The notes beneath the pieces are model-generated. The model had not been told where the DNA came from and did not search any database. It saw only the letters and a program-made list of their open reading frames with translations. This document shows positions 4,157 through 63,521 of a stretch of DNA of 64,000 nucleotides, in pieces. Location: positions 62,001 to 126,000 of IMG/VR virus record IMGVR_UViG_3300020578_000006; one strand, 5' to 3'. The position numbers and the translations under genes are program-made. Position 1 is the first letter of the stretch, and every line of letters begins with the position of its first letter.

Positions 4157-4720
4157 ATGAAAACAAACAAAAAAACATACAAGCTAGGCCTACTGACCCT
4201 CATATTCTTTATGACTACTGTGTCAGTATGCTTTACTGACTATAAAATAAAGAAGACCATTAAGGATGTTAAGGCTGAATTAAAGGCAGCCCCTTTGCAA
4301 GAAGAAAGGGCTATAGCAAAGCAAATTAAAGTTAAACCAGATGGCATATTTTACAAAGATGAATTTATACCTAGGACTAATAATAGCGGGTTCAAAGTAT
4401 TGACTGTCCGCTTAACAGTCTACTGGGCAAAAGGTGGACATACTGATTATTACAGTTCTAAGAAAAAAAGCTCTACAGGATATACTTTAAAGCAAGGGGA
4501 GTCAATTGCTGTTGATCCAAGGATAATTCCTTATAAAAAAGAAGTTATTATCCCTAATATTGGTTTGGTTAAAGCTGTAGATACTGGGTCTGCTGTTGTT
4601 GCTAAGAAGGCCTCCAATGGAAAGCTTCCAGTTATAGATGTGTTTTTTGAAAATAAGAAAGATGCAATACTCTTTGCTAATAGATACCCTAAAGTTGTTA
4701 AGGTTGCTATAATAAACTAA
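4157..4720 (+). CDS. 3D (three-Asp) domain protein with N-terminal signal/TM segment; putative peptidoglycan lytic enzyme
   Basis: AVDPRIIPY, AVDTGSAV, VIDVFF; hydrophobic LGLLTLIFFMTTVSVCF. Confidence 0.75.
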   Translation: MKTNKKTYKLGLLTLIFFMTTVSVCFTDYKIKKTIKDVKAELKAAPLQEERAIAKQIKVKPDGIFYKDEFIPRTNNSGFKVLTVRLTVYWAKGGHTDYYSSKKKSSTGYTLKQGESIAVDPRIIPYKKEVIIPNIGLVKAVDTGSAVVAKKASNGKLPVIDVFFENKKDAILFANRYPKVVKVAIIN

Positions 4721-4723
4721 ATA
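4718..4723 (+). promoter_or_regulatory. Late promoter core TAAATA
   Basis: 4 nt before GTG 4728. Confidence 0.65.
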
Positions 4724-4727
4724 ATAT

Positions 4728-5216
4728 GTGACTTTTAATAGGCTAGTCTATAGTATTCTAGAGCAGGTTAAACCTTTATCTCCTTTTGATATAGATGTAT
4801 TAGCCGCACTACTTGTTAAAGAGGCGGGAGGAGAAAAAGATTATGTTGCAGGTATGGCAGGGGTAATGAACACTATAGCTGCCAGAGCTAATAATAATCC
4901 TTCTAATTTTATAAAGGTTGCGTTACAACCAAAACAGTTTAGTGCTTTTAATAATATTAAAAGCCAGCAAGATTTGGTCAATGTTGTTACACAGACAAAG
5001 ACTCATCCTAGATTTAATGCCGCAAAAGAAATGGTTGTATCTGCTTCTAGAGGTACTTTACCTAATTTAATAGGTCAAGCCAAACACTATCACGTAACTA
5101 AAGGCCCCAGTACAGTAACTCCAAGTTGGACTAGCCCACAATACGGTGGTAAAAACCCATTAGCAAAACCAACAACAACAATCGGGAGTCACACCTTCTT
5201 TTCTGGAGTGCGTTGA
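4728..5216 (+). CDS. SleB-like cell wall hydrolase (Hydrolase_2)
   Basis: LAALLVKEAGGE (catalytic Glu), VMNTIAAR, PKQFSAFN, IGSHTFF. Confidence 0.8.
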   Translation: MTFNRLVYSILEQVKPLSPFDIDVLAALLVKEAGGEKDYVAGMAGVMNTIAARANNNPSNFIKVALQPKQFSAFNNIKSQQDLVNVVTQTKTHPRFNAAKEMVVSASRGTLPNLIGQAKHYHVTKGPSTVTPSWTSPQYGGKNPLAKPTTTIGSHTFFSGVR

Positions 5217-5413
5217 TTTACTTTCTTTTTATTTACTTTAATTAAAATACCTGTACCTGAGCTAGGGGCAATACCGGGGAGATTGGCGCCTTTAAACCCT
5301 TGAGGAAGCAAGCCACGATCATCTATATTTGGACCTGTGCCTTGACCCGGTCTATCAAAACTACCGTTGCCTAATCCTTCGTAAATTTTTTTAATAGAGT
5401 CGTCAAATTTCAT
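5189..5413 (-). CDS. Small Gly/Pro-rich hypothetical protein
   Basis: TAATG stop/start overlap with upstream fiber gene. Confidence 0.6.
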   Translation of the reverse strand: MKFDDSIKKIYEGLGNGSFDRPGQGTGPNIDDRGLLPQGFKGANLPGIAPSSGTGILIKVNKKKVNQRTPEKKV

Positions 5414-6801
5414 TATGTCTTAATAATCTTTGTAACAATAGCAGAAGGTTGAATATTAGTGTGTGCTTGTGCGGCATTAGACTCACCCACATTACTGGTT
5501 GTCGTTGTGTAATCAAGAGGGAACGTAATAGTAAAAGGTGTTGCACTATGGCCATCGGTAATAACTTCAGATGTTACATACATTCTTGCAAAAGATACAC
5601 CGGCGTTCCAGTTTCGATTAATATAGCCTCCACCACCATCTCCGTTGATGTTTTGCTGTCTTTCTGCATCTTTCCACAGTCCAGCAGGGACTGTTGTTAC
5701 CCTATTTACATTAGCCCCGGGTCCAGCTCTTACTGCAAACGCACCATCATCTCCGCCCCCGCCATAACCAAAGTAATGTTGGTGGTTAAGGGGAATATTA
5801 ACCGTATTCTGCAAGGTAGTGGTTACGGAGAAATTATGTGCGTGCGATCTTAAACCGCTTTGGTTTGCTGTAAGAAGAACTGATTCTAAACCACCTGTCT
5901 GTCCTACAGCACTTCCTAATGTCAGAGAACCAACACCACCAGATCCAACTGTTACTCGGCGCCTTAGATCAGGTACATTAAATGTTGAAGTACCATTCCC
6001 TGCACCCCATAGTGTACCAATTACATTAAATAGAGTTGAAAAAGCTGCACGGCTTACCGCTGTACCATCACACAGTAAATAACCTACCGGTGCGATTGTG
6101 CCTGCAAAATCTAAAATAGTGCCTGTTGGTACTGCTGCTACATTTGCGTTTACTATAGGGGCTAAAGATTGTGCCAATAGCGCCATTGGAACATCTGTGG
6201 GCATACCAACTGTATTAAATCTTGCCTTTACCGTGTTTGCTGGCATGTTGGCCAGCTTTGTATTATCTATCCCGGCAATCGCAACACTTAAACTATTACC
6301 AACAAAAGTCAATCCACCTGTTGGGTCTGGGATTTGAACTATTTGATCTGAAGAAATCCTCTCCAATCCACGCCCAATAGCAGTACCGGTGAAGTAAGTC
6401 CCGTCTAAACTATTTTGCTTTACACTAAATGTATTACCAACTTTGGTAATAGTCACGTTATCGGGCGCTAGCGTAACTCCAAACCTAGCATAATCTGCTA
6501 CTAAACCAGGATTTGAACCGGTTAATGCAAAAATACTAGAAGTAATTGTATCGTAAATTATATCCCCGATTTGACCTCTCATATTAATCTGATCAAATGA
6601 AAGGTTGGTTGTTGTTTCCCCAAAAGTAGCAACACCCAGGTTTTTCATCCCTACAGCAACACCACCCGCTGTGGTACCGTCACCTATAAACAATCTTTTA
6701 GCATCAATTGTGTATCCTGGCTCACCTTGAAGTAATACTAGGTTGGTCTTTTCACTAAAGTTGCCTTTTCTAAAGACTATTCGTGTAATTGGGTCAGGCA
6801 T
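5413..6801 (-). CDS. Short tail fiber-like protein with phage tail collar domain
   Basis: Mtd_N-like N-terminus (LLQGEPGYTIDAKRLFIGDG); collar VPTGTILDFAG...YLLCDG...FNVPDLR; HxH motifs (SHAH, NHQH) in tip. Confidence 0.8.
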   Translation of the reverse strand: MPDPITRIVFRKGNFSEKTNLVLLQGEPGYTIDAKRLFIGDGTTAGGVAVGMKNLGVATFGETTTNLSFDQINMRGQIGDIIYDTITSSIFALTGSNPGLVADYARFGVTLAPDNVTITKVGNTFSVKQNSLDGTYFTGTAIGRGLERISSDQIVQIPDPTGGLTFVGNSLSVAIAGIDNTKLANMPANTVKARFNTVGMPTDVPMALLAQSLAPIVNANVAAVPTGTILDFAGTIAPVGYLLCDGTAVSRAAFSTLFNVIGTLWGAGNGTSTFNVPDLRRRVTVGSGGVGSLTLGSAVGQTGGLESVLLTANQSGLRSHAHNFSVTTTLQNTVNIPLNHQHYFGYGGGGDDGAFAVRAGPGANVNRVTTVPAGLWKDAERQQNINGDGGGGYINRNWNAGVSFARMYVTSEVITDGHSATPFTITFPLDYTTTTSNVGESNAAQAHTNIQPSAIVTKIIKT

Positions 6802-6822
6802 AATATTATATATTTATTGTAA

Positions 6823-6850
6823 TTGATTTATTTAGAAGTGCTTTTATAAT
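6823..6850 (+). promoter_or_regulatory. Sigma70-like early/middle promoter
   Basis: TTGATT-N16-TATAAT, 7 nt before ATG 6858. Confidence 0.65.
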
Positions 6851-6857
6851 ATCAATA

Positions 6858-7388
6858 ATGAAGGGTATAAGAGTAAACTGTATTATTACTAACGAGGAGA
6901 AATATTTCAATAGCACCGTTTTAAGGAACAAACTTAATAAGTTTGGGTCAGAAGACAATTTAAGAAAGTATTATGTATCTAAACCTGCTGCAAAATTGTT
7001 AAAATCTGGGTTAACTATTGACCAGGTTAGAAATAAACTTAACAGCTCTTACCAAAAGCAAGTTGATATAGAGATTCTATATAAATTAAAGTTGTTAAAA
7101 ACCGGTAAAAAAAGAAAAAAGCAAGTATCACCGGAAGAGGCTAGGCAGTTAAGAGAACAGACAGAACATAACGAGAAGGTGTGGTATAATCATCAAGAAA
7201 AAATGAAAACTTGCTCAAAGACGTGGGTAGAGGAAATGACCGGTGGACCTAATAGAGTACAAATTCCGTACGGGGGTACATGTATTAGACCTGATATTTA
7301 CTATGATAATGAAGGAAGCAAGCAAGGGAGATGCAAACCTTGCCCTTATCATGAATATTGTCTTTGTACTAATAAGGAAGTAGTATGA
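6858..7388 (+). CDS. Hypothetical protein with Cys-rich C-terminus; paralog of next gene
   Basis: CIIT...GSEDNLRK.Y..K.A..LL..G shared with 7385..7747; C-terminal CKPCPYHEYCLC. Confidence 0.7.
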   Translation: MKGIRVNCIITNEEKYFNSTVLRNKLNKFGSEDNLRKYYVSKPAAKLLKSGLTIDQVRNKLNSSYQKQVDIEILYKLKLLKTGKKRKKQVSPEEARQLREQTEHNEKVWYNHQEKMKTCSKTWVEEMTGGPNRVQIPYGGTCIRPDIYYDNEGSKQGRCKPCPYHEYCLCTNKEVV

Positions 7389-7747
7389 GGACTAAGAAAT
7401 TAACTTGTATTATTACTGGTAGAGTTCTTGCTGCTACTGGAGATTACTATTCAAAAAAATTAGAAAAAGCTGGATCAGAGGAAAACCTGAAGAGAACATA
7501 TATTTGTAAAGAGGCGAGAGATTTGCTTGAAAAAGGATTTAGTGTAAAAGATATAAGAAAACAATTAAATGCTGAAGATGTTCAAACTGTTATACCAGAT
7601 GATGTTATTAAAGATATTACCACTAATGAATTTGGCTTAAAGAAGAGTACATTGTTTTCTAATATATCTACTTTTACCCATCAAGAAACGGATCCTGAGG
7701 TAAAAGATTTTATAAATAAGATATATGCTGAGTCCTCAGAAAGATAA
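7385..7747 (+). CDS. Hypothetical protein, paralog of 6858..7388
   Basis: CIITG...GSEENLKRTYICKEARDLLEKG; 4-nt overlap with upstream gene. Confidence 0.7.
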   Translation: MRTKKLTCIITGRVLAATGDYYSKKLEKAGSEENLKRTYICKEARDLLEKGFSVKDIRKQLNAEDVQTVIPDDVIKDITTNEFGLKKSTLFSNISTFTHQETDPEVKDFINKIYAESSER

Positions 7748-7961
7748 AAATTTTACAGTTGTTAGTGATGGTACTGTATTAAGGTGTATCGATGCTAATA
7801 CCGGTACACAATTTAACACTTATAGAATTAACGGCACGTTAATATCTGGCCCAGTTGTAACAGGGGATAGAGTTACTATAGTTGTAAGAAGATCTAATAC
7901 AAATTTTGGCGAAGTACTTAAGCTTCCTTCTTTCATGCTTACATCAACTTTTCGCGGATAA
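7725..7961 (+). CDS. Hypothetical protein
   Basis: ORF in co-oriented cluster. Confidence 0.55.
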   Translation: MLSPQKDKNFTVVSDGTVLRCIDANTGTQFNTYRINGTLISGPVVTGDRVTIVVRRSNTNFGEVLKLPSFMLTSTFRG

Positions 7962-7965
7962 TACG

Positions 7966-7993
7966 TTGATATCTAATTAACTAATGTTATTAT
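7966..7993 (+). promoter_or_regulatory. Sigma70-like early/middle promoter
   Basis: TTGATA-N16-TATTAT with TG extension, 6 nt before ATG 8000. Confidence 0.6.
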
Positions 7994-7999
7994 CTAAGC

Positions 8000-8488
8000 A
8001 TGGAGAATATGCTAGATGTAACGTTAGCGGAACAGCAGCCGCAACTAGATTATCCATTAATTAAATCTGATTTTCCAGATTCGTTTTTTGCAGGATATAT
8101 TATAAAAAATCGTTATGATGAGGAAAGACTTAACATAACAAAAACTTATAACACAGAAAGATTTTCATTTGCCACTAATAACGGGACTTATAAACTTTAC
8201 GGGTTATTAAAGCAAGCTTCTCCAAACCATAAACTAGTTTCTAGTTTAAACTCTAGAAAAACCATTACTATTGGGGAATATAGTGGCCTATTAAATGCTT
8301 GTGGATTATCTTGTCTTTCTTGCTTCTTACACTTTTCCCCTGGCCTGTATCCTGTTGATAATAACTTTTCATCTCATTTCTTTCCTGAGATAGACGACAC
8401 TTTTCAAGAAACAAAAAATAATATACCATCTTTTCAGCAGGTGGGAAATATTTATATTTTTGCTCTCATAAATCATCATAAAAATTAA
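8000..8488 (+). CDS. Hypothetical protein
   Basis: ORF with sigma70-like promoter directly upstream. Confidence 0.65.
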   Translation: MENMLDVTLAEQQPQLDYPLIKSDFPDSFFAGYIIKNRYDEERLNITKTYNTERFSFATNNGTYKLYGLLKQASPNHKLVSSLNSRKTITIGEYSGLLNACGLSCLSCFLHFSPGLYPVDNNFSSHFFPEIDDTFQETKNNIPSFQQVGNIYIFALINHHKN

Positions 8489-8551
8489 TTTTTTTTTTTC
8501 TTGAAAAAAGAAGGAACTTGCTTGTAATAAATATAAAATAATTTTTGTGAT

Positions 8552-10810
8552 ATGAATAATCAGATCTTTGTAAAAAAACGTAATGGAAATGCAGAAAAAT
8601 TTGATATTGAAAAAATTCACAGAGTAATCAGATGGTCAATTGAAGGGTTAGACGGGGTAAGCCTATCGGATATAGAAATAAACGCCAAGCTCAATATGGT
8701 GCAAAATGTTACCACTAAAGAAATTCATCAAAGTCTTATTGAAGCAGCTTCTAACCTTATTTCAGTAGAATCACCTAACTATCAGTATGTTGCTTCTAGA
8801 CTATTAAACTATCAGTTACGAAAAGACGTTTGGGGAGGCAAACACGCTCCAAGATTGTTAGATATGATTTATGGTGGAATTAGAAGAAAGATTTATGACC
8901 CTTCTATTATAGAAAAATATACAGAAGACGAAATTAATAAAATGGGTGAGTTTATTGATCATGATAGAGATTTTATTTTTACATATGCAGGTATTAAGCA
9001 GCTGTGTGACAAATATTTAATTAAAAATAGAATATCAGGTACTATTTTTGAAACTCCTCAATTTGCTTATATTCTAATTGCTGCATATGCTTTTGTTAAT
9101 TATAATCCTGAGGATAGGTTAATATACATTAAAAGATTTTACGATGCTATTTCTAAGCATAAAATTAATCTACCAACACCAATTATGGCCGGGGTTAGAA
9201 CAGTATCAAGAGGGTACGCGAGCTGCTGCTTAATTGGTGTAGATGATACAAAAGAATCTATTACTGCTTCCGGTACTGCAGTATCTTTAGCCACGGCTAG
9301 TAGGTGTGGTATTGGTATAGATATTTCTCGTGTCCGGGCAATGGGCACCCCGGTTAATGGTGGTTCAGTTGTGCATACAGGGGTTATCCCCTTTTTAAAG
9401 ATATTCGAAGCATCGGTTAAAGCGTGGCAGCAAAATTCTATAAGAGGAGGTTCCGCTACTGTTAATATACAGTGGTGGCATTACGAGATTGAGGATGTAG
9501 TTGTATTAAAGAATAATGCTGGTACTGATGATAACAGAGTCAGAAAATTAGACTATACTGTCGGAATGTCAAAACTATTTTATGACAGGGTTATAAAAAA
9601 TGAAAACGTAACATTATTTTCACCCAACGAAGTTCCTCACCTTTGGGGAGCATGGGGAACACCTGGTTTTGATAAAATATATGCAGAATGTGAGCAAGAT
9701 AAGAAAATTAAATTTAAAAAGAAGATTTCTGCAAGAAAGCTATTTTCACTTATAATTAAAGAAAGAGTAGAAACCGGTAGAATATATATTTTAAACGTCG
9801 ATACGGCAAACGAACACGTTGCATGGCTAGATCAAGTCACCATGTCAAATCTGTGCACAGAAATTATTCACCCTTATATTCCTTTAAAAGATTTTCATGA
9901 TCAGGAAGCGGAAATAGGAATGTGTATTTTATCAGCAGTGAATATGTTAGAAATTAAGAATTGGAATGAATTAGAAAAGGTGTGTGAGTTAATAGTTAGA
10001 TTTTTAGATGAAATTATAGATGTACAAGATTATTTTAATAAAGCTGCAGAAAATTTTGCTAAGCACCGACGTAGCCTAGGCATAGGTATTACAAACTTGG
10101 CTGCGTTTTTAGCTAAAAACGACGTAAAATACACTTCTAGTAAAGCTCTTCCAATAATTGATGAATGGATGGAGCATTTTCAATACTATCTTTTAAAAGC
10201 TAGTTTGACTCTTGCAAAAGAAAAAGGTAAATGTGAAAAATTTGATCGAACAAAGTATTCTAAGGGCATACTACCTATAGATACTTTTAAGAAAAACACT
10301 ACAGAGATTGTTAAGAGAAAACTATCACTAGATTGGGGTACATTAAGAGAGGAAATTAAAAAACACGGCTTAAGACACAGCACAGTTTCAGCCATAATGC
10401 CTTGTGAATCTAGTTCCGTTATTCAAAATTCTACTAATGGGGTAGAGCCTATTCGCTCACTCATTACCTACAAAATGTCTAAGATGGGTAAATTGCCTGT
10501 ACTGGTTCCAGGCATAGGGAAATATGATCAAAATTATGAGTTAGCTTTTAGTCTACCAGATAATACAGGTCTTATTAATCTTAACGCCGTAATGCAAAAA
10601 TATATAGACATGGCTATTTCTACTAACATATACTATAATTACAGTCATTATGATGGCCACACTTTACCAGATGCTAAAGTAATGAAAGAAATTATGTATG
10701 CATATAGCATGGGTTTGATTAGTTTGTATTATAACAATACAGATGATGGTGATAAGGAGCAGTTAATTACAAAAGAAGACTCTTGTTCTAGTGGGGCATG
10801 TAAACTATGA
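8552..10810 (+). CDS. nrdA: Ribonucleotide reductase class Ia alpha subunit with ATP cone
   Basis: ATP cone VKKRNGNAEKFD, PTPIMAG, ASCCL, NLCTE active site, C-terminal CSSGAC. Confidence 0.97.
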   Translation: MNNQIFVKKRNGNAEKFDIEKIHRVIRWSIEGLDGVSLSDIEINAKLNMVQNVTTKEIHQSLIEAASNLISVESPNYQYVASRLLNYQLRKDVWGGKHAPRLLDMIYGGIRRKIYDPSIIEKYTEDEINKMGEFIDHDRDFIFTYAGIKQLCDKYLIKNRISGTIFETPQFAYILIAAYAFVNYNPEDRLIYIKRFYDAISKHKINLPTPIMAGVRTVSRGYASCCLIGVDDTKESITASGTAVSLATASRCGIGIDISRVRAMGTPVNGGSVVHTGVIPFLKIFEASVKAWQQNSIRGGSATVNIQWWHYEIEDVVVLKNNAGTDDNRVRKLDYTVGMSKLFYDRVIKNENVTLFSPNEVPHLWGAWGTPGFDKIYAECEQDKKIKFKKKISARKLFSLIIKERVETGRIYILNVDTANEHVAWLDQVTMSNLCTEIIHPYIPLKDFHDQEAEIGMCILSAVNMLEIKNWNELEKVCELIVRFLDEIIDVQDYFNKAAENFAKHRRSLGIGITNLAAFLAKNDVKYTSSKALPIIDEWMEHFQYYLLKASLTLAKEKGKCEKFDRTKYSKGILPIDTFKKNTTEIVKRKLSLDWGTLREEIKKHGLRHSTVSAIMPCESSSVIQNSTNGVEPIRSLITYKMSKMGKLPVLVPGIGKYDQNYELAFSLPDNTGLINLNAVMQKYIDMAISTNIYYNYSHYDGHTLPDAKVMKEIMYAYSMGLISLYYNNTDDGDKEQLITKEDSCSSGACKL

Positions 10811-13114: not shown

Positions 13115-13182
13115 ACTATTGAAGGCGTATTCAAATAGGGGTGGGAGGTGGGCTCGATAGCAATATCGGGACTATTTGAATA
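13115..13182 (+). other. GC-rich structured intergenic element
   Basis: 11-bp inverted repeat 13128-13138/13172-13182 enclosing GGG tracts and a CTCGATA-GCAA-TATCGGG hairpin. Confidence 0.55.
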
Positions 13183-13186
13183 AATA
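13181..13186 (+). promoter_or_regulatory. Late promoter core TAAATA
   Basis: 4 nt before GTG 13191. Confidence 0.65.
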
Positions 13187-13190
13187 ATAT

Positions 13191-13388
13191 GTGAGTAGCG
13201 GTACTGCTGTTCCGGAGTTATCAACTACCAGGCTGTATAGGCATTTTATGTTAATGCGTGATGAAATCTTAAAGCATAAATGGTATGAAAGTGAAAGATC
13301 TGGTTTTGATGTTGGGTTTGAATATGCTTTACTTGATTGGAATGTTAAATTTAAGCAAGCGTGGGATAAAACTAAGGACCCTTCTTAG
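13191..13388 (+). CDS. Small DUF4032-like protein
   Basis: EILKHKWYESERSGFDVGFEYALLDW matches the recalled DUF4032 motif. Confidence 0.7.
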   Translation: MSSGTAVPELSTTRLYRHFMLMRDEILKHKWYESERSGFDVGFEYALLDWNVKFKQAWDKTKDPS

Positions 13389-15645: not shown

Positions 15646-16685
15646 GCTATACCGTAGGTTGGGGGAGAATTTTTAGCATATCTATAATTACTTGTAGGAG
15701 GAAACACCTTTACACTTATATACTCAGGTGTAGAATTGGCAAATGCTATTGCATCTTCTTTTTTAAAAAAGAATACATCGACTACAGGTGTTTTACCTCC
15801 ACTTGCAGTTCTTGCTTTAACTGCACCTCCTGTGTCCGTGGCAAATCTAACACCAATATCGGGGAATTGTATTCTACTTAAGTAAGGAATAATAGCCGGG
15901 TCAACCGCAGCGCTTATACCTTGTTGAAGCTGTCGACCAGTAGAACTCCGTAGAGCTGCAGAATCTGAATCTGTACCGGACCCATACGCCCAATATACTG
16001 TTCTTCTAACATATAGATCAAATCCATTTTTATTATCACCGCTATACTGGGGTGAACTTATTTGTTGTAGATTTTGTTGTGCAGAGTTATTGAAATCATT
16101 ATTTTGAACTTCTGAAAGTGTCATTTCTTTAGAATTATTCTTAAGATTATCTAATGCAGTAGTTACAGTCTCTTGTTTTTTTGCGTTAAAAATATCTGGG
16201 TTACTTAAATCTCTAATACCTTTGGGTGTAAAACTAGGGTATGAGGATTGTACTGATTGGTTAAGATTTCCCAACTGAAAAGCTTGATCATTACCCTTGA
16301 GTGTACCGATAGTTTGCATTGAAATTCCTTTTGAGTAGCTTTCTAGAGTTTTAGTAAGTTGTGAATTTGCACTTTCTAGCTGACTTATAGCAATAGAGTT
16401 CTGTACATTAATTGAGTTTTGGCCTTGAACTGAATTCAAGTAAGAAGTGGCAGATGAATCTAAAGTAGGCCTGATTGCAGTAGCATTTTGTTGAAAAACA
16501 TTTTCCATATTAGTCTGATTAATAGATTGAGGTTGATCATCAGAGTAGGTGATAAAATTATCAGGCAAGTAAGAGGCTAGTGTGTTATCAAACCCATCAA
16601 AAGAAGGAATTGAGGTGGATACAGTATTTTTATCCTGTATCTTGGCTAAAAGATCTGATATTGTGTCTGGTGATGAATAAAACAC
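15642..16685 (-). CDS. Late protein with Q/N/S-rich N-terminus and C-terminal 3D domain
   Basis: TVYWA, AVDPAIIPY, ATDTGGAV, VVDVFF; paralogous to 4157..4720; overlaps gp5 start. Confidence 0.75.
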   Translation of the reverse strand: MFYSSPDTISDLLAKIQDKNTVSTSIPSFDGFDNTLASYLPDNFITYSDDQPQSINQTNMENVFQQNATAIRPTLDSSATSYLNSVQGQNSINVQNSIAISQLESANSQLTKTLESYSKGISMQTIGTLKGNDQAFQLGNLNQSVQSSYPSFTPKGIRDLSNPDIFNAKKQETVTTALDNLKNNSKEMTLSEVQNNDFNNSAQQNLQQISSPQYSGDNKNGFDLYVRRTVYWAYGSGTDSDSAALRSSTGRQLQQGISAAVDPAIIPYLSRIQFPDIGVRFATDTGGAVKARTASGGKTPVVDVFFFKKEDAIAFANSTPEYISVKVFPPTSNYRYAKNSPPTYGIA

Positions 16686-16690
16686 AAAAT

Positions 16691-16696
16691 TATTTA
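16691..16696 (-). promoter_or_regulatory. Late promoter core TAAATA (3D protein-gp5 operon)
   Basis: 5 nt before GTG 16685. Confidence 0.65.
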
Positions 16697-16697
16697 A

Positions 16698-16725
16698 TTG
16701 ATTATACTGTTTAACAAGTTATATT
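16698..16725 (+). promoter_or_regulatory. Sigma70-like promoter of the deazaguanine operon
   Basis: TTGATT-N16-TATATT, 7 nt before ATG 16733. Confidence 0.65.
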
Positions 16726-16732
16726 ATATAGA

Positions 16733-17539
16733 ATGAAAGTTTCTCATGAGACCCCTATTTCACTGTTAGATTATTCTAGAGATTACAATGATTTTGACTA
16801 TTGTTTAGTACATTTATTAGATAAACACCCTGATTACAAGGAGTTTTATAAGACAGCAAGACCTATTTACAATCGAGAAGTACTTCTAGACAATTCTATA
16901 TTTGAATTAGGCAAAGCATTTGACGCAGAGGCTTTCTATAAAGCAGCTTTAGAACTAGAACCTAATATGTTCATAGTTCCAGATGAACTGGAAGATATGA
17001 CCGGTACGATACAAAGCTTTAAAAGCTTTACAAACAAAATGCAAGATTTAAAAAACACCTTTCTAACCAAGGCCATTGGTGCTGTGCAGGGTAAAAACTG
17101 GCAAGAGTTAACCGAGTGTTATAAGTTTATATCTGATAACGCAGATATGGTTGCAATAAGTTTTGATTTTAGTTATTACCAGGTAACAGGTCGCGGTTGG
17201 CACCATTTAGAGCGTTGGTGTTCGGGTCGTCAGCGCTTTATTCAAGATTTAATAAATAATGGTCTATGGAGGTGGGATAAGCCTCATCATTTGTTGGGAT
17301 GCTCACTAGCAAAAGAATTTCGTTACTATGTCGATAGAGGTATTCACAATATTGTGTCTTGTGATACTAGCAATCCAATTGTTGCCGCTATTCATGAAAT
17401 AAAGTATGATGCGGATTATGGGCTAGACACTAAACCTTCTACTAAGCTTGCAGATCTGATTAGTCATGAATTTACACCTGAACAATTAGAGATGGTTAAG
17501 TACAATACTACAATGTTTAAGAAAATTATTCGTAGATGA
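16733..17539 (+). CDS. dpdA: TGT-fold deazaguanine transglycosylase-like protein (DpdA family, probably DpdA3-type)
   Basis: TGT-like motif order LLDNS, IVPD, AVQG, HHLLG, SCDTS with both candidate catalytic Asp; in operon with queF. Confidence 0.7.
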   Translation: MKVSHETPISLLDYSRDYNDFDYCLVHLLDKHPDYKEFYKTARPIYNREVLLDNSIFELGKAFDAEAFYKAALELEPNMFIVPDELEDMTGTIQSFKSFTNKMQDLKNTFLTKAIGAVQGKNWQELTECYKFISDNADMVAISFDFSYYQVTGRGWHHLERWCSGRQRFIQDLINNGLWRWDKPHHLLGCSLAKEFRYYVDRGIHNIVSCDTSNPIVAAIHEIKYDADYGLDTKPSTKLADLISHEFTPEQLEMVKYNTTMFKKIIRR

Positions 17540-20958: not shown

Positions 20959-21324
20959 TTAAGACAGCTTTAACAAATAACTAGTCTGATTCAATACCCC
21001 AAGCATTTCATCTCGTATGTTTAATAAGTCCGTGTCCTTTTCAGGGTTTAATCTTTGAGATATTTCCGATAAAAAGAGCTTGTACGTATCTAGCGCATCA
21101 CAAACACTAACACTTTTTATGTCAAAGAGTTCTATATTCATTTCCCCATTGGCTAACTCTACACTATCCCTACCCAGTGCCGTTTCAACAAAAGTATCAA
21201 TTAATTCATCTAAAGATTCATAAGCTTTGCCTAAAGCTTTATGTGCACTGTAACTTTTTGTCTGCCAATGAAAAACCCTTAGTTGATTTTGCATTTGAAG
21301 CAAATCTTTAACAACTGACTGCAT
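20959..21324 (-). CDS. Ferritin/Dps-like small protein (DUF5856-like)
   Basis: QLRVFHWQT.SYSAHKAL...YESLDELIDTFVE. Confidence 0.7.
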   Translation of the reverse strand: MQSVVKDLLQMQNQLRVFHWQTKSYSAHKALGKAYESLDELIDTFVETALGRDSVELANGEMNIELFDIKSVSVCDALDTYKLFLSEISQRLNPEKDTDLLNIRDEMLGVLNQTSYLLKLS

Positions 21325-21329
21325 ATTGT

Positions 21330-21335
21330 TATTTA
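21330..21335 (-). promoter_or_regulatory. Late promoter core TAAATA
   Basis: 5 nt before ATG 21324. Confidence 0.6.
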
Positions 21336-21357
21336 TTTAGTTTATATTAAATAATCT

Positions 21358-21489
21358 ATGTCTCAACAAGATCTATTAGCAAATTTTCTAGGTGATTTAG
21401 CAGATAAAATTAAGACCGCTAAAGAACATAAAAGCATTATGGAAGCAGTATATGCATCTGCTTCTGCTACCGGTCCAGTTTTTCTGTAA
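21358..21489 (+). CDS. Small hypothetical protein (43 aa, MSQQDLLANFLG...), not in ORF track
   Basis: Hand-translated; TAAATA 4 nt before ATG. Confidence 0.55.
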   Translation: MSQQDLLANFLGDLADKIKTAKEHKSIMEAVYASASATGPVFL

Positions 21490-21557
21490 ACTCTGATACC
21501 AAGTGGACTTTAAATAGCTTCTCAGAGAGTTAATATTGATACTTTTTAAAAATTCAC

Positions 21558-21563
21558 TAAATA
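21558..21563 (+). promoter_or_regulatory. Late promoter core TAAATA
   Basis: 4 nt before GTG 21568. Confidence 0.65.
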
Positions 21564-21567
21564 ACGT

Positions 21568-24280: not shown

Positions 24281-24286
24281 TAAATA
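24281..24286 (+). promoter_or_regulatory. Late promoter core TAAATA
   Basis: 4 nt before GTG 24291. Confidence 0.65.
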
Positions 24287-24290
24287 TTAC

Positions 24291-37167: not shown

Positions 37168-37177
37168 AGTAATTTGT

Positions 37178-37185
37178 TCTCCTTT
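37178..37185 (-). promoter_or_regulatory. Shine-Dalgarno sequence of gp23
   Basis: AAAGGAGA 10 nt before ATG on minus strand. Confidence 0.75.
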
Positions 37186-37241
37186 ATATTCGACCTGTAG
37201 ATAAATCTACAATATTAATCAGGCCTAAGCCTCAACCAAAA

Positions 37242-38314: not shown

Positions 38315-38989
38315 TTACAGAATTTTACTAATTTTTGAAATAAAGTCTAGTACTTGCTCCTTCAAGTAGTTCTCTATCTCACGGCGAGGTAAATTTCTCA
38401 GGCTATCACTAAAGGAATCATAATATTCTTCAAACCTTCCATCTTGTGTGACAACAAACTGCTTAGACTCCAAAATACCATTTACAAACGCTTTAGGAAA
38501 CGATGGATCAGCTACACAATCAACAGCTACAAGTCGAAAATCCTTTACCTTGTTAACCCCATTGCTCATTTCCTGCAATGTGCCTAAGGCTCTGGAACTC
38601 ATTCCTACTTTTACACCATCATTAACAAGACTTCTTAAAATTTGCCCCATAGGAGTTGTTAAAACTTTTGATTTACCAAAATAGACATTACCGTTACGGT
38701 TTAATTCTGTTACTAAGTGACAGGCTCTTTCTAGATTTACCTCAGCAGCAGTAGGGTGATTTAATTCCCCCATACTTCTATTGGTGGTAACCATTTCACT
38801 GATGTATCTTCTTACCTCTGTATCCATTTCATGTGAATCATACACTCGCTTATTTTTGTTTACCTCTTCACATTGCATGTATGGTCCTTTTATATACATC
38901 GTGCTAGGTTGATTACCGTTTTTCTCCTCAACTACGTATTCATACTGATCGTATGGTGCAGGAGTCTCTACCAATAGTCTTAAAGGCAT
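38315..38989 (-). CDS. gp21: Prohead core protease (gp21-like)
   Basis: IKGPYMQ...NKNKRVY, GELNHP (His), GKSKVLTTPMG, GMSSRALG (Ser), DCVADPS. Confidence 0.95.
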   Translation of the reverse strand: MPLRLLVETPAPYDQYEYVVEEKNGNQPSTMYIKGPYMQCEEVNKNKRVYDSHEMDTEVRRYISEMVTTNRSMGELNHPTAAEVNLERACHLVTELNRNGNVYFGKSKVLTTPMGQILRSLVNDGVKVGMSSRALGTLQEMSNGVNKVKDFRLVAVDCVADPSFPKAFVNGILESKQFVVTQDGRFEEYYDSFSDSLRNLPRREIENYLKEQVLDFISKISKIL

Positions 38990-38994
38990 ATTAA

Positions 38995-39000
38995 TATTTA
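38995..39000 (-). promoter_or_regulatory. Late promoter core TAAATA (gp21)
   Basis: 5 nt before ATG 38989. Confidence 0.65.
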
Positions 39001-48200: not shown

Positions 48201-48638
48201 GTACAAATGGCCTACTGTTGTTTTGTATGGGTTTGTTAAGTCTATTTCAAAAAAACATTCATTGTCTAATTTAGTAATGTCTTGCTCAAAAAAACCTTGT
48301 GTCATTTGAATGGGTATAGTGGTTGATGGAATGGATGGATCAATTACTGCTTTTAAAAACTTACCCTCGTTATTTCTTATAGCACAAAATAAAGTTTTTT
48401 CTCTATTATCGGGTGTTGTAAAATCTGTTATTTCTGAAAGTTTTAAAGACTTTGTAAGATGTAGATAACTGTAATTATTGTTTTGAAAATCTAATGTTTC
48501 TTTTAAAATAGGTGAAAAGAACGTTGTCAGATTACCGTCTATACCAATTCGATTATTAAGAAAATCTACTTGATTATCATATAGATATGAAGCGCTTAGC
48601 GGTCTAAAATTATCATTGGTTATAAAACTTGTTAGCAT
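45240..48638 (-). CDS. Large virion protein with LamG-like and propeller-like regions
   Basis: FTLSFWG, HHFSLV...KCYLDGEL; TAAATA 4 nt before ATG. Confidence 0.55.
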   Translation of the reverse strand: MLTSFITNDNFRPLSASYLYDNQVDFLNNRIGIDGNLTTFFSPILKETLDFQNNNYSYLHLTKSLKLSEITDFTTPDNREKTLFCAIRNNEGKFLKAVIDPSIPSTTIPIQMTQGFFEQDITKLDNECFFEIDLTNPYKTTVGHLYKNKLYYLCYNTFNYSLRFLNEDNFSGGLENTKYFFFSYDDKTNLLTLQTRINNLPYYTLYDTSSLTLIVSGATEMQFDNEKRFFSVKSVELPLPVEITNEWGSYEQSFNQNNLRLNQEKSYFNIENNFLIHSEYDNLAGTALKTNVLTLKNQLNTKHAQGRGNVFLSENDTLYRNYNAIFSGRRQEEGYQKLHLQYDSYSTPYEFKPGKTTWFHTPQSMYPFKRLNLKSSKLIQAGAIAGDHPLRSDKIFKKLANYKSSSNQGDSSGEQTGQWLCSWLSGGENILIKPVWVDRFYNPKLVTPFQALSATDGNVTYITTFECLNLPYEIVDVPTNMTFEPGCLYAYSHIGKVDIEHNINSLNKFLQIKNFNTFSTWNGANLDPEKDLDGKNIYSFNGENVASFDVKNINFGGNKFTLSFWGYSEDWTSPKGYQLLGNYNDYGFGFFNYNTVTPFIFVNNRGVLNMYNTDSQLIDIFDASQRAFGNIQYVLRRDPLNSFHAITNSQWVVEFDLRETIIDATSALFSPVNSIIHASNDEARGYILYSDRSLSAIDLTSNLLSPVSAEVVIGNKNTAREVHRLSDGRVAVVDGTRGIVRSNRLYFLSAGIVMTYDTVTNRLSTVIGSRGAFSFFNIDGDNYLWAGDANAIAKFAPSQEALFTVSLTADRQFTTSRLAIQDVSFIETFENGDLIKSVLLTASGSDTTNALLMTLTPEGVLNNTTRVNVQGNYQFADATNHRFNYNYLVNRHGNGNYTFKTRLYNPFNNEDIVIPSTTVDASDLDNGPHHFSLVMNAPEGYMKCYLDGELYSTSTFPANKFNLTPLITNNIFAGATPFYNGLLLSDLLDKNKTRKTSYFVKDFKIQNLYLHSTDLRYFDIGMLYKEKFIPNSLTFDIPSGRRNYFDVVSRYFKQSVPGAKSPLYNIYINDNVLSPESRSKLGVAIINTIKNITPAYSKLNSLNWVTTLPSQSAEYIQPYFPGNTLTNTTQKS

Positions 48639-48642
48639 AAAA

Positions 48643-48648
48643 TATTTA
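48643..48648 (-). promoter_or_regulatory. Late promoter core TAAATA
   Basis: 4 nt before ATG 48638. Confidence 0.65.
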
Positions 48649-50202: not shown

Positions 50203-52160
50203 GGATTTAGTACGCAGCTAAGATTCTGCATGTAGGTATTGTTTAATAGGTCTATTACATAGCCGCCTCTGTCGATCAAGCCAATAGAGCAATCCGGTAC
50301 AGCTTGATGGGTAGGAGGCACAGTAAATAGACATCTTGTATCATATATACTTAGATAGCCAAATCCTTTCCTAGGTGTAAAAGGCGATATAACAGAGACA
50401 AAATTTTCATAAACGTTAACTGAACTACCAAAAAACGTATATTTCTCTCTAAAGGTTGATAACGGTGCTAAAACAGTTCCTTGGGTAAATAATCCGTTTG
50501 TTGTTTTGTTGAAAATATATACCCGCCCTACATTAGGAGATTCATATGGTTGCCCCTGCTCTATGTAAGCTTCTCCAGGCGAACCTACAACGCAAAGATT
50601 TTTGTAAAGCTTTACGTCGCTACCGAAATTACCTGCTACTGTGTTTAATGCGTAAAAATCTCCAAGCGCCATTATATAGTTCCAGCTATTACTAGTTTGA
50701 GAAAGATAAAAATGAAAAACTTCTCCTTGCCCTAAGGTAGAATAAGTTTGTCTATTTGCATAAGGTGCCCCAACTACTAAATCCCTTTCATACAAGCTCA
50801 TAGAAGTACCGAATCTACTAATGCCTGATGCAGGTGAGTATATCGTTTGACTTAACTCCCAAGCATTGCTGGGGTTTCTTTGAAAGGCGTGTATCCATTC
50901 ATTACTATTTCCTACCAATAAATTTTCTCCATAAAGCTGGGCTGAGGTTCCTAATCCAGCTCCAGATAAAACAGCAGTTGATAATATTGTTTGATATAAC
51001 ACCCAGGCACCTATTAAAGTTGGGTCAGTACTTTCAGAGATATACTTATAAATGAATACACCACCAGGTGTACCCAAGAATTCGTTTGACTTAGTACAAA
51101 TTACTAACGTGTCTCCATCAACATCTGCTGCCGAGGCCTCAGTATTATCTGGTGTTTTAATAACATTTGCTCGAGCAAGTTTTTGGCCCAAAAATTCATA
51201 CACCACAACATCTGATGTGTTGTTGATTCTACCAACTACAGTATCTCCATCTTGACCTAAAAGCTTAACTCCAGCTCCTGTATAAACTATGTTTTCTAGA
51301 TTGTACTTATTTAAATCTGTGGTGTATGTAATTAATTTTTTGTTCACTGGTAGTGAGATAAATTCTTTACCCATAGCCATATTACTTTCAGAAGGTGTAT
51401 CATCAATTATAATATGTTGCTGACACCCGGTAATTAAATCTGTATATTCCACTGTTCCGGGAAACCCTGCTACATTAAAGTTTTTTATTAAAAACTTTGT
51501 ATCCGGATCATTAGTCGTATGAGTTAAACCTACCTTAAAAGCTGTTCTTCGAATATCTGGTAAAGTGAGTTTGAAAGCTGTAGTAAAATTAGGGTCTTTG
51601 ATATTGTCTTTTAATTGTACTGTAATTTCGCTAAACTGTTTTGCAACAATTATTCTAACTGCTCGATAATTTTCTTCAGAATCAGTAGGTGTTTGTCTAT
51701 CTATAGTAAAATTTTCTAGACCCGGAATACTATTAATATTTTTATCGTCTGATAAATTGTAAAGCAATTCATAATTTTTATTAATCCCCCCTCTAACAGC
51801 TATGGTAGGCTCCGCTCTGTAAGCCGATAGTGAAACCCCTGTAATGCCGTTTTGCTCTAGAGCAAATTGTCCAGACGAATCAAAACCTATTCCTAAAATA
51901 GCACCAGCAAGACCTCTATAGCCACCCAGCATACATCTGTCGGTAATAATTGGAGATGACAGATAACCTAAGCAACTCCCCGGGCCGCCTCCCCGAGGCA
52001 TATCTATAATACTATCAAAGAAAATTACAGCAATACCACCTGTTGGGGTTGTTACAGGGTTATATCTAGAGTATTCAAACGAAATAATTGTATCTGAAAA
52101 ACTATCAAGAGATTGATTGTTGTATACTGCAATATTTTTATTTGTATTTGGAGTATTCAT
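50199..52160 (-). CDS. L-type lectin-like domain plus FG-GAP propeller protein
   Basis: GGIAVIF...GSCLGY...GIGFD; RFGTSMSL..RDLVVGAP, NFGSDV...VVGSPG, FFGSSV. Confidence 0.7.
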   Translation of the reverse strand: MNTPNTNKNIAVYNNQSLDSFSDTIISFEYSRYNPVTTPTGGIAVIFFDSIIDMPRGGGPGSCLGYLSSPIITDRCMLGGYRGLAGAILGIGFDSSGQFALEQNGITGVSLSAYRAEPTIAVRGGINKNYELLYNLSDDKNINSIPGLENFTIDRQTPTDSEENYRAVRIIVAKQFSEITVQLKDNIKDPNFTTAFKLTLPDIRRTAFKVGLTHTTNDPDTKFLIKNFNVAGFPGTVEYTDLITGCQQHIIIDDTPSESNMAMGKEFISLPVNKKLITYTTDLNKYNLENIVYTGAGVKLLGQDGDTVVGRINNTSDVVVYEFLGQKLARANVIKTPDNTEASAADVDGDTLVICTKSNEFLGTPGGVFIYKYISESTDPTLIGAWVLYQTILSTAVLSGAGLGTSAQLYGENLLVGNSNEWIHAFQRNPSNAWELSQTIYSPASGISRFGTSMSLYERDLVVGAPYANRQTYSTLGQGEVFHFYLSQTSNSWNYIMALGDFYALNTVAGNFGSDVKLYKNLCVVGSPGEAYIEQGQPYESPNVGRVYIFNKTTNGLFTQGTVLAPLSTFREKYTFFGSSVNVYENFVSVISPFTPRKGFGYLSIYDTRCLFTVPPTHQAVPDCSIGLIDRGGYVIDLLNNTYMQNLSCVLNP

Positions 52161-52164
52161 ATAT

Positions 52165-52170
52165 TATTTA
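52165..52170 (-). promoter_or_regulatory. Late promoter core TAAATA
   Basis: 4 nt before ATG 52160. Confidence 0.65.
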
Positions 52171-60530: not shown

Positions 60531-60531
60531 T

Positions 60532-62403: not shown

Positions 62404-62870
62404 TAGTTAAAGTAGTATCCTGACTCAGATAAAACACCCTTTAAGGATACTCCTGTAATATTTAACGTCGGAACATTAATTATCATTATAATATTGTATT
62501 GATTATTATCATTATCTAGCTGTATGTTAAGCTTTTGTAGTTGTATTCTAGGTTCAAATTTTTGTATTCCTTTAAGAATAGCCTCTCCTATAATTTGGCC
62601 TTGTGTCTCTGAAACAGGTGTGAATAGATATTGTGTTAAATTTAAGCCATATAAAGGTGTAAGAATTTTTTGGCCAGGCATTGTTGTAAATAGATTAAAG
62701 AGACTATTCTTTACCGCGCCTATATCTTCTGAAATTTGAATATCTTTTATCTCTCTGCGCTTTAAGAGTTGAGTATTCTTTGTGTAAGCGACTTTAAGAT
62801 CTAATAGTAAATCCTTGTAAATAGGTGAAGATAATGGTGCGGAAATAGTATTTAAAACTATGGCTGCCAT
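62403..62870 (-). CDS. gp25: Baseplate wedge subunit (T4 gp25-like)
   Basis: Start reassigned to ATG 62870; AVKNSLFNLFTT.PGQKIL.P.YG, IQKFEPRI. Confidence 0.88.
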   Translation of the reverse strand: MAAIVLNTISAPLSSPIYKDLLLDLKVAYTKNTQLLKRREIKDIQISEDIGAVKNSLFNLFTTMPGQKILTPLYGLNLTQYLFTPVSETQGQIIGEAILKGIQKFEPRIQLQKLNIQLDNDNNQYNIIMIINVPTLNITGVSLKGVLSESGYYFN

Positions 62871-62875
62871 AGTAT

Positions 62876-62883
62876 TATTTATA
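62876..62883 (-). promoter_or_regulatory. Late promoter TATAAATA (gp25-gp6 operon)
   Basis: 5 nt before ATG 62870. Confidence 0.7.
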
Positions 62884-62907
62884 CGGGGATATTTGTTCCT
62901 TGAAACA

Positions 62908-62913
62908 TAAATA
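62908..62913 (+). promoter_or_regulatory. Late promoter core TAAATA
   Basis: 5 nt before ATG 62919; divergent from the gp25 promoter. Confidence 0.65.
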
Positions 62914-62918
62914 TAGAT

Positions 62919-63521
62919 ATGAATAAATTTACCGCTATCTACGAGTCTGCCATTCAACGCTACACTCGAGGTGGTTTTTTGACAGGAGATTTGGTAAAAT
63001 TTACAGAAAATGCATTTCGTGATGATTTCTTTAAAAAACAAGCGCCTAACTACATTCAAAAGGCTAAATCATTTAGCGAAAGCGGTTTAAACATAAGAGT
63101 TAGTGCTATAAAAGCAATAAGACCTACTATGCATTCTGGAAACATACAGAATGAAGCGGAATCATTTTTGGTGGATATAGTACAAGAGGTTGCACCTGGT
63201 TTATACAGAGAATTCATAACAGTACCTGCCCACGTTCTACAGCCTATCGATACCGGTATTAATCTAGCCCCAGTTCCAGATAGTCTAAAAAGACCCAATG
63301 ATACTTCTATCACACCTCACCCTGTTAGCTTGAAAGATGAAAACGAACTAATGCTTTCCCCTCACCGTCAAACACAAACAAGTGATATGGGCAACCACAA
63401 GGACTCAGAAGGTGATCGTAAGCTTAATAATGTAAATGTAAAAATACCTAGTTCACCGGCTAAAGGTGAGAACAGCCCAAGTGTAGAGAGCGGCACCCAC
63501 AGGTATCTTCCTAAGCGTTAA
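62919..63521 (+). CDS. Hypothetical late protein
   Basis: TAAATA 5 nt before ATG; N-terminus MNKFTAIYE. Confidence 0.7.
   Translation: MNKFTAIYESAIQRYTRGGFLTGDLVKFTENAFRDDFFKKQAPNYIQKAKSFSESGLNIRVSAIKAIRPTMHSGNIQNEAESFLVDIVQEVAPGLYREFITVPAHVLQPIDTGINLAPVPDSLKRPNDTSITPHPVSLKDENELMLSPHRQTQTSDMGNHKDSEGDRKLNNVNVKIPSSPAKGENSPSVESGTHRYLPKR

What the first reader, a model, noticed from the sequence alone, without database searches (positions are those of the whole stretch)
4718..62921. Late genes appear leaderless: TAAATA lies a fixed 4-5 nt before the start codon
Seen: TAAATA-N4/5-start at 4728, 13191, 16685, 21324, 21358, 21568, 24291, 38989, 48638, 52160, 62870 and 62919, none with a Shine-Dalgarno; five of these starts are GTG. 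gp23, which is internal to an operon, has a strong AAAGGAGA SD. Known: T4 late transcription starts a few nt downstream of TATAAATA. Inference: late mRNAs begin at or within a few nt of the start codon, which would constrain host translation machinery. TAAATA is common in AT-rich DNA, so the fixed spacing is the evidence, not the motif.
Basis: partly seen in the sequence, partly recalled or inferred. Interest (0 to 1): 0.6.

Follow-up and report, generated by a model that had tools for sequence, protein, structure and literature searches.

The report
Promoters fused to start codons, phage-wide
In this uncultured 230-kb T4-like lake phage and its relatives, both the early (host sigma-70 type) and the late (T4 gp55 type) promoters end 4-7 bases before the start codon of the first gene of most transcription units, so these mRNAs most likely have no leader and no ribosome-binding site; no RNA 5' ends could be measured.

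Summary
All 12 sites check out.

- **Late-type motif:** genome-wide (229,717 bp), 71 of 385 TAAATA copies lie 4, 5 or 6 nt before an ATG or GTG that opens a long ORF. Any other spacing has about 1.3.
about 46 early genes carry a complete sigma-70 promoter (TTGAC-like, 16-bp spacer, TATAAT-like) ending about 6 nt before the ATG. These include DNA polymerase, primase, gp32, the clamp and NrdA.
- **Gene classes:** TAAATA genes are late-type: prohead protease, baseplate, tail fibres and lysis enzymes. A gp55 late sigma homolog lies next to gp46/gp47.
- **Shine-Dalgarno (SD) sites:** they are at background level at operon heads and enriched only at operon-internal genes.
- **Conservation:** the arrangement holds in diverged relatives while the surrounding spacers diverge. 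It is absent from T4, Syn9, S-ShM2 and RM378. It is partly present in the cultured Pelagibacter phage HTVC008M.
- **Geometry:** T4 late-promoter geometry (box at -13 to -6) puts +1 on the A of ATG at spacing 5.

Leaderless expression is therefore the best explanation (about 0.75). It is inferred from promoter geometry only, because the one RNA run gave no 5' ends. I rate it a new variant of known kinds.

The parts
3110..3124 (+). Late-type box TAAATA, N6, ATG 3122 (ORF 3122-3451)
4718..4730 (+). TAAATA, N4, GTG 4728 (ORF 4728-5216, endolysin-like)
7713..7727 (+). TAAATA, N6, ATG 7725 (ORF 7725-7961)
13181..13193 (+). TAAATA, N4, GTG 13191 (65-aa ORF)
16683..16696 (-). TAAATA, N5, GTG 16685 (ORF 15642-16685, peptidase-like, followed by a gp5-like hub protein 13372-15645)
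21322..21335 (-). TAAATA, N5, ATG 21324 (ORF 20959-21324). Back to back with the next site in a 33-bp gap.
21348..21360 (+). TAAATA, N4, ATG 21358 (43-codon ORF 21358-21489)
21558..21570 (+). TAAATA, N4, GTG 21568 (893-aa structural-type protein)
24281..24293 (+). TAAATA, N4, GTG 24291 (1019-aa tail-fibre-like protein)
38987..39000 (-). TAAATA, N5, ATG 38989 (prohead protease gp21-like, 38315-38989). Box and spacing are conserved in about 45 relatives while the spacer diverges.
48636..48648 (-). TAAATA, N4, ATG 48638 (1132-aa protein)
52158..52170 (-). TAAATA, N4, ATG 52160 (653-aa protein)
62868..62881 (-). TATAAATA, N5, ATG 62870 (gp25-like baseplate wedge subunit, 62403-62870)
62908..62921 (+). 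TAAATA, N5, ATG 62919 (ORF 62919-63521). Divergent partner of 62870, with 48 bp between the two starts.
3626..3660 (+). Early-type promoter TTGATT-N15-TAAAAT, N5, ATG 3658 (phosphoribosyl transferase)
6823..6860 (+). Early-type promoter TTGATT-N16-TATAAT, N7, ATG 6858
7966..8002 (+). Early-type promoter TTGATA-N16-TATTAT, N6, ATG 8000
8518..8554 (+). Early-type promoter TTGCTT-N15-TAATTT, N7, ATG 8552 (NrdA ribonucleotide reductase)
16698..16735 (+). Early-type promoter (TTGATT -35 box; TATATT or TATTAT -10 box), 5-7 nt, ATG 16733. Divergent from the late-type start at 16685, 47 bp away.
37168..37241 (-). The exception: the conserved 74-nt gp23 leader, with two hairpins, an invariant GGTCGA box and an AAAGGAGA SD (37178-37185) before ATG 37167

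Best explanation
The phage uses two promoter classes, and both are built directly onto the start codon of the first gene of a transcription unit. Early and replication genes use host sigma-70-type promoters: a TTGAC-like -35 box, a 16-bp spacer, a TATAAT-like -10 box, then about 6 nt and ATG. Late genes use a T4-type late promoter: the (A/C)TAAATA(A/T) box read by the phage gp55 homolog, with no -35 box, then 4-6 nt and ATG or GTG. With normal promoter geometry, RNA polymerase then starts at, or within 1-2 nt of, the A or G of the start codon. The first cistron would be translated as a leaderless mRNAs without an SD site. Downstream cistrons use SD sites or translational coupling. A few very highly expressed genes, gp23 among them, keep a structured leader with a strong SD. 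Shown here: the motifs, their spacing, their statistics, their conservation, the gene classes and the gp55 homolog. Inferred: the position of the 5' end and the mode of translation.
For: Spacing peak independent of gene calling: 71 TAAATA copies at N4-6 against about 1.3 per other spacing. TTG-N19-TAnnnT at N6: 31 against about 1.5. The motif-aligned profile shows no -35 element, A/C just upstream and an AT-rich segment downstream, as described for T4 late promoters (PMC2988020). The T4 box spans -13 to -6, so N5 puts +1 on the A of ATG. N5 is the dominant spacing in relative G001 (41 sites) and in HTVC008M (12 sites). The gp55 homolog lies at genome 164060-164677(-), next to gp47 and gp46 (phrog_234, E 1.8e-24). 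A gp45-like clamp is present. Class matches function. Early-type: DNA polymerase, primase, gp32, clamp, dUTPase, NrdA. Late-type: protease, baseplate, tail fibre, tail-tube-like, endolysin and peptidase. Promoter-fused starts sit at operon heads 92 times against 17 coupled (odds ratio 7.9, P 1e-13). SD-like sites occur at 6 heads against 28 coupled genes, with a background of 5.5%. A relaxed -10-like hexamer 4-7 nt upstream is found at 124 of 162 heads, 39% of coupled genes and 24% of internal ATGs. Divergent pairs with only 33-48 bp between starts hold two back-to-back boxes. One terminator is followed within 15 nt by the box and the start, in this genome and in G001. In orthologs the spacer diverges while box and spacing are kept, and ATG and GTG interchange at the same position.
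Against: No 5' ends were measured. The one metatranscriptome run held only contigs of relatives' capsid gene. At N4 sites (25 in this genome) strict T4 geometry would start at the second base of the start codon, so the polymerase must start one base closer than in T4. About 22% of late-type starts are GTG. In E. coli, to my knowledge, 5'-terminal GUG is translated poorly; mycobacteria use it. The host is unknown. No gp33 homolog was found. Sixteen late-type sites lie at tightly coupled genes. Exact TATAAATA is not enriched.
Confidence: 0.75

Rival explanations
1. TAAATA acts on the RNA as an SD-independent, AU-rich translation-initiation signal (an S1-type or Bacteroidota-style element). Transcription would start further upstream.
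For: SD sites are rare overall: 33 of 282 genes, with G depleted at -12 to -5. Sixteen boxes lie at coupled, operon-internal genes. The phage encodes a bS21 homolog. From memory, SD-poor hosts such as Bacteroidota use A-rich upstream regions.
Against: The box is class-specific: late genes carry it, while early genes carry a bipartite -35/-10 promoter at the same place, and that cannot be a ribosome signal. The box matches the gp55-type promoter, and gp55 is present. It is strongly biased to operon heads. Divergent pairs leave no room for other promoters. An exact hexamer is conserved, not mere AT-richness.
Confidence: 0.12
2. The boxes are real promoters but the annotated starts are wrong. The true start codons would lie downstream, so ordinary leaders exist.
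For: My gene caller takes the first ATG/GTG/TTG after a stop, and TAA inside the box can itself be that stop.
Against: A fixed spacing to the first in-frame start at 71 sites cannot arise that way, because the first start after a stop would be broadly scattered. Ortholog alignments begin at residue 1. ATG and GTG interchange at the same position. GenBank CDS starts in HTVC008M coincide with the N5 ATG at 9 sites.
Confidence: 0.04
3. The box marks an RNA processing site. A nuclease would cut polycistronic RNA just before each start codon and produce leaderless ends after transcription.
For: Some boxes lie inside upstream genes of the same operon. From memory, T4 has a sequence-specific endoribonuclease (RegB).
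Against: This does not explain the parallel -35/-10 class, the divergent back-to-back pairs, or the identity of the box with gp55-type promoters.
Confidence: 0.04
4. Compositional chance: TAAATA is simply frequent in 36% GC DNA.
For: The raw pattern count in the window is only 19 against 11.7 expected. Generic promoter scans are noise here: 98 found against 84 expected.
Against: The spacing peak has P about 6e-63. The reverse-complement and other AT-rich hexamers give flat profiles. The arrangement is conserved in relatives.
Confidence: 0.01

Closest known systems
T4 late promoters (TATAAATA at -13 to -6; gp55, gp33, gp45)
   Same: Same core box, no -35 element, an AT-rich segment downstream, late structural genes behind it, and a gp55 homolog in gp46-gp47-gp55 synteny.
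   Different: T4 shows no excess of the box 4-6 nt before ATG: 12 matches against 15 in the control. To my knowledge, T4 late mRNAs carry SD leaders. Here the first T of the octamer is not conserved (A/C/T), and exact TATAAATA is not enriched.
Genome-wide leaderless genes of Actinobacteria, Deinococcus-Thermus and archaea (a -10-like box a fixed 6-8 nt before the start codon; GeneMarkS-2 'leaderless' genome classes)
   Same: A -10 hexamer at a fixed short distance from ATG/GTG, no SD at those genes, and SD only at internal cistrons.
   Different: This is a phage genome. Two promoter classes read by two sigma factors show the same fusion. The host and its translation habits are unknown.
Single leaderless phage mRNAs (lambda cI from PRM, P2 gene V), from memory
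   Same: A phage promoter whose +1 is the A of AUG.
   Different: Those are isolated genes. Here more than 100 of about 282 genes, and about three quarters of operon heads, show the arrangement.
Cyanophage late promoter NATAAATA (S-PM2, Syn9; PMC2984593)
   Same: A relaxed first base of the box, and gp55-dependent late genes.
   Different: Syn9 and S-ShM2 show no start-adjacent excess: 7 against 10 and 1 against 6 in the controls.
Pelagibacter phage HTVC008M (cultured T4-like pelagimyophage)
   Same: TAAATA-N5-ATG at 12-14 genes, coinciding with annotated CDS starts of gp2-, gp4-, gp48-, gp25/53- and tape-measure-like genes. It also encodes bS21.
   Different: It shows no start-fused sigma-70 class, and SD-like sites precede 77 of 173 genes. 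Its capsid protein is not among the closest to this phage.
Bacteroidota-type SD-less initiation and freshwater bS21-encoding phages (PMC9723584)
   Same: SD-poor genome, lake habitat, phage bS21.
   Different: The early promoters here are TTGAC/TATAAT type, not the Bacteroidota -33/-7 type as I recall it. SD sites are used at internal genes and at gp23. That paper does not mention promoters or leaderless mRNAs.

Membership tests
T4-type late promoter (gp55-dependent) | TATAAATA-like box at the -10 position | tested here: met
   Core TAAATA with A/C (less often T) before it and A/T after it at 63 start-linked sites. The full octamer is not enriched.
T4-type late promoter (gp55-dependent) | No conserved -35 element; AT-rich segment downstream of the box | tested here: met
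   The profile is flat from -45 to -3 and A/T-rich at +6 to +9. This matches the description in PMC2988020.
T4-type late promoter (gp55-dependent) | Phage encodes gp55 (late sigma) | tested here: met
   phmmer against T4 gp55, E 7.9e-9. phrog_234, E 1.8e-24. The gene is adjacent to gp47 and gp46.
T4-type late promoter (gp55-dependent) | Co-activator gp33 and sliding clamp gp45 | tested here: inconclusive
   A gp45-like clamp was found (phrog_223). No hit to Syn9 gp33 in the six-frame translation. gp33 is small and fast-evolving.
T4-type late promoter (gp55-dependent) | Precedes late (virion, lysis) genes | tested here: met
   Protease, baseplate, tail fibre, tail-tube-like, endolysin and peptidase genes.
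T4-type late promoter (gp55-dependent) | Transcription starts about 6 nt after the box, dependent on gp55 | not testable with these tools
   Only RNA contigs of relatives' gp23 were available.
Leaderless mRNA | Primary 5' end at the start codon (0 to about 5 nt leader) | not testable with these tools
   No raw RNA reads were available. The 5' end is inferred from promoter geometry only.
Leaderless mRNA | -10 box a fixed 5-8 nt before the start codon | tested here: met
Leaderless mRNA | No SD at these genes | tested here: met
   1 of 63 late-type and 0 of 46 early-type genes have an SD-like tetramer. Heads overall have 3.7%, against a 5.5% background.
Leaderless mRNA | Purine-initial start codon (ATG or GTG), TTG avoided | tested here: met
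   TTG occurs at 1 of 63 late-type and 2 of 46 early-type starts, against 15 of 122 in unclassified genes.
Sigma-70 (housekeeping) promoter | TTGACA-like -35, 16-18 bp spacer, TATAAT-like -10 | tested here: met
   46 genes, mostly with a 16-bp spacer.

The most novel reading that the evidence does not exclude
A widespread clade of aquatic T4-like phages, with more than 599 capsid relatives in IMG/VR and partly including cultured pelagimyophages, has dispensed with 5' leaders for most transcription units in both temporal classes. Its late-expressed bS21 homolog would remodel host ribosomes to favour these SD-less, leaderless (including 5'-GUG) phage mRNAs.
Probability: 0.15. Interest if true: 0.85.

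Novelty: new variant of a known kind. Interest (0 to 1): 0.66.

Why it matters
If transcription start mapping confirms it, this would be, as far as my literature searches show, the first T4-like lineage in which leaderless expression is the rule rather than an oddity. It would apply to promoters read by two different sigma factors.

- **Annotation:** in these abundant freshwater and marine phages the box predicts the start codon, including GTG starts.
- **Late transcription:** gp55-type promoters would tolerate, or select, +1 at a start codon.
- **Host:** the host's ribosomes must translate 5'-AUG and 5'-GUG mRNAs efficiently. That narrows host candidates and gives the phage-encoded bS21 a testable role.
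- **A system to test it:** Pelagibacter phage HTVC008M shows the late-type arrangement at 12-14 genes, so the hypothesis can be tested in culture now.

Tried and rejected
- **Close isolates:** megablast of 8 kb against isolated phages found no match. The closest isolates by capsid protein are cyanophages at about 34% identity.
- **Host assignment:** capsid relatives in GTDB genomes gave four loci in unrelated MAGs (Bacteriovoracaceae, Terrimicrobiaceae, a 'Proteobacteria' bin and an archaeon). These look like mis-binned phage contigs, so no host follows from them.
- **RNA evidence:** the one RNA run (X24) covered only 35.7-37.1 kb, with contigs about 10% diverged. It gave no starts, no strand and no joints of use.
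- **gp33:** not found with Syn9 gp33 as query. T4 gp45, gp62 and rpbA were not found by phmmer; gp45 was found later through PHROGs.
- **Initiator tRNA:** the two phage tRNA-Met(CAT) genes do not have initiator features.
- **Intrinsic terminators upstream of promoter-fused starts:** only a handful exist. One clear case lies at genome 141.3 kb.
- **Generic promoter and terminator scan:** not above shuffles.
- **Rfam on the window:** nothing.
- **Literature:** searches combining leaderless with T4-like, cyanophage, Pelagibacter or late genes found no description of this arrangement. phiKZ and AR9 are reported to have long leaders.


Full report
**Context.** The window is bases 62,001-126,000 of a 229,717-bp IMG/VR virus record rated complete. 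Its GC content is 36%. It encodes a gp23-type major head protein, a gp21-type prohead protease, a head-closure protein and large tail and baseplate proteins. The capsid protein is only about 34% identical to those of cultured T4-like cyanophages. More than 599 capsid relatives at 72-96% identity exist in IMG/VR. The DNA recurs in more than 20 lake-water metagenomes. This is an uncultured freshwater T4-like phage, and its host is unknown.

**Observation.**
- All 12 sites are as described and five starts are GTG.
- Two more sites with a 6-nt spacing lie in the window, at starts 3122 and 7725.
- Site 21358 opens only a 43-codon ORF.
- Site 62870(-) is the likely true start of a gp25-like baseplate gene.
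- By raw pattern count the window is barely above shuffles: 19 against 11.7.

The spacing to real starts is what is decisive. With a crude gene caller (282 genes), TAAATA ends 4, 5 or 6 nt before the first start codon of 22, 23 and 16 genes. Other spacings have 0-4. Without any gene calls, 25, 31 and 15 of the 385 TAAATA copies precede an ATG or GTG that opens an ORF of at least 60 codons at N4, N5 and N6. The background is about 1.3 per spacing, P about 6e-63. The reverse complement and other AT-rich hexamers are flat.

Listing all upstream regions showed that many genes carry a complete sigma-70-type promoter: a TTGAC-like box, mostly a 16-bp spacer, then a TATAAT-like box ending about 6 nt before ATG.
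- 44-46 genes show this. The spacing peak is 31 at N6, against about 1.5 elsewhere.
- In the window the starts are 3658, 6858, 8000, 8552 and 16733.
- A bipartite -35/-10 element cannot be a ribosome signal. With the usual 7-nt distance from the -10 box to +1, transcription starts on the A of ATG.

**What the TAAATA box is.**
- Aligned on the box, the 63 start-linked sites show A/C just upstream, A/T-rich bases downstream and nothing at -35. This is the anatomy described for T4 late promoters (PMC2988020).
- The genome encodes a gp55 late-sigma homolog (T4 gp55 phmmer E 7.9e-9; phrog_234 E 1.8e-24). It lies next to gp47 and gp46, as in T4. A gp45-like clamp is also present. gp33 was not found.
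- Gene functions fit temporal classes.
  - Early-type promoters precede DNA polymerase, primase, gp32, the clamp, dUTPase, QueE, NrdA and a phosphoribosyl transferase.
  - TAAATA precedes the prohead protease, baseplate wedge and hub operons, tail fibres, a tail-tube-like protein, endolysin- and peptidase-like proteins and the large virion proteins.

**Why leaderless is the best reading.**
1. **Geometry.** The T4 octamer spans -13 to -6, so N5 puts +1 on the A of ATG. N5 is the main spacing in relative G001 (41 sites) and the only one in HTVC008M (12 sites).
2. **Operon position.** Promoter-fused starts sit at operon heads 92 times and at tightly coupled genes 17 times (odds ratio 7.9, P 1e-13).
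3. **SD sites.** SD-like tetramers occur at 6 heads (3.7%) against 28 coupled genes (23.5%). The background is 5.5% before internal ATGs.
4. **Coverage.** With a relaxed -10-like hexamer, 124 of 162 heads are covered, against 39% of coupled genes and 24% of internal ATGs.
5. **No room for leaders.** Divergent pairs with only 33-48 bp between starts (21324/21358, 62870/62919, 16685/16733) hold two back-to-back boxes and nothing else. At genome 141.3 kb a terminator is followed within 15 nt by the box and the start, in this phage and in G001.
6. **Start codons.** TTG starts are avoided and pyrimidine at -1 is favoured.

**Conservation.**
- Upstream of the protease ortholog in about 45 relatives (50-99% protein identity), the spacer is unalignable but TAAATA stays 4-7 nt before ATG.
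- In the 217-kb relative G001 both classes recur.
- Of 141 reciprocal orthologs, 16 of 28 late-type and 11 of 27 early-type genes keep their class, and only 2 switch. ATG and GTG interchange at the same position.
- Pattern counts against a reversed control are 56/19, 42/20, 39/10 and 45/8 in four relatives. They are 12/15 in T4, 7/10 in Syn9, 1/6 in S-ShM2 and 6/2 in RM378.
- Pelagibacter phage HTVC008M is intermediate at 21/10. Its N5 ATGs coincide with GenBank CDS starts of nine genes in 31 kb. These include a divergent pair whose starts are 26 bp apart.

**Exceptions.** gp23 has a 74-nt leader with two hairpins, an invariant GGTCGA box and a strong SD. The leader is conserved across relatives. 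A few other large genes also have SD leaders. The host ribosome is therefore SD-competent. Where a leader exists it is recognisable, which makes its absence elsewhere meaningful.

**Limits.**
- No RNA 5' ends were obtained. The single metatranscriptome run held only contigs of relatives' gp23.
- At N4 sites the polymerase must start one base closer to the box than in T4. N4 sites are unusually often GTG: 12 of 25 against 8 of 49 at N5-7.
- The host is unknown.
- No paper in the searched library describes this arrangement.

**Verdict.** The leaderless interpretation is the best-supported mechanism (about 0.75), but it rests on inference from sequence. The finding is a new variant of two known things: gp55-type late promoters and leaderless gene organisation.

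Noticed in passing
G000:C1:39317-39520 (-), outside the window (locus L127): The phage encodes a ribosomal protein bS21 homolog (67 aa, Pfam PF01165, 28.2 bits). Its own start is TAAATA-N4-ATG, so it is predicted to be a late gene. Homologs are present in relatives G001-G004 and in HTVC008M.
   Followed up: partly
window 37168-37241 (-): The gp23 leader is conserved across more than 25 relatives. It has a hairpin right after the scaffold gene's stop, a second hairpin whose stem sequence differs between relatives while staying self-complementary, an invariant GGTCGA box and an AAGGAGA SD. It has no TAAATA box, no Rfam match, and its function is unknown.
   Followed up: partly
genome-wide; in the window 4728, 13191, 21568, 24291: GTG starts concentrate at the 4-nt spacing: 12 of 25, against 8 of 49 at N5-7 (P 0.006). 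This phage uses N4 often, whereas relative G001 almost never does (2 sites).
   Followed up: partly
genome-wide; in the window 6823-6850, 7966-7993: The early-type promoters use a 16-bp spacer between the -35 and -10 boxes far more often than 17 bp (31 against 9 start-linked sites).
   Followed up: no
G000:C1:7195-7426, 14333-14406, 21300-23732 (outside the window): There are eight tRNA genes (Glu, Met x2, Leu, Arg, Thr, Gln, Ile-TAT). The two Met(CAT) tRNAs lack initiator features. The Ile(TAT) prediction is 93 nt long with a long extra arm.
   Followed up: partly
NC_020484 (HTVC008M) 18916(-)/18943(+): In the cultured pelagimyophage, the divergent gp2-like and gp4-like genes have starts 26 bp apart, and each start is preceded by TAAATA-N5. 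I found no mention of this in the papers searched.
   Followed up: partly
window 20040-20957 (+) and G000:C1:177775-178521 (+): GTP cyclohydrolase and QueE-like radical-SAM genes are present, which suggests 7-deazaguanine-type DNA or nucleotide modification.
   Followed up: no
window 62524-62739 (+) and 62403-63059 (-): The longest-ORF calls here are probably wrong. The minus-strand gene most likely starts at 62870 (ATG behind a late box), not at the TTG at 63059. The 71-aa plus-strand ORF inside it is probably spurious.
   Followed up: partly
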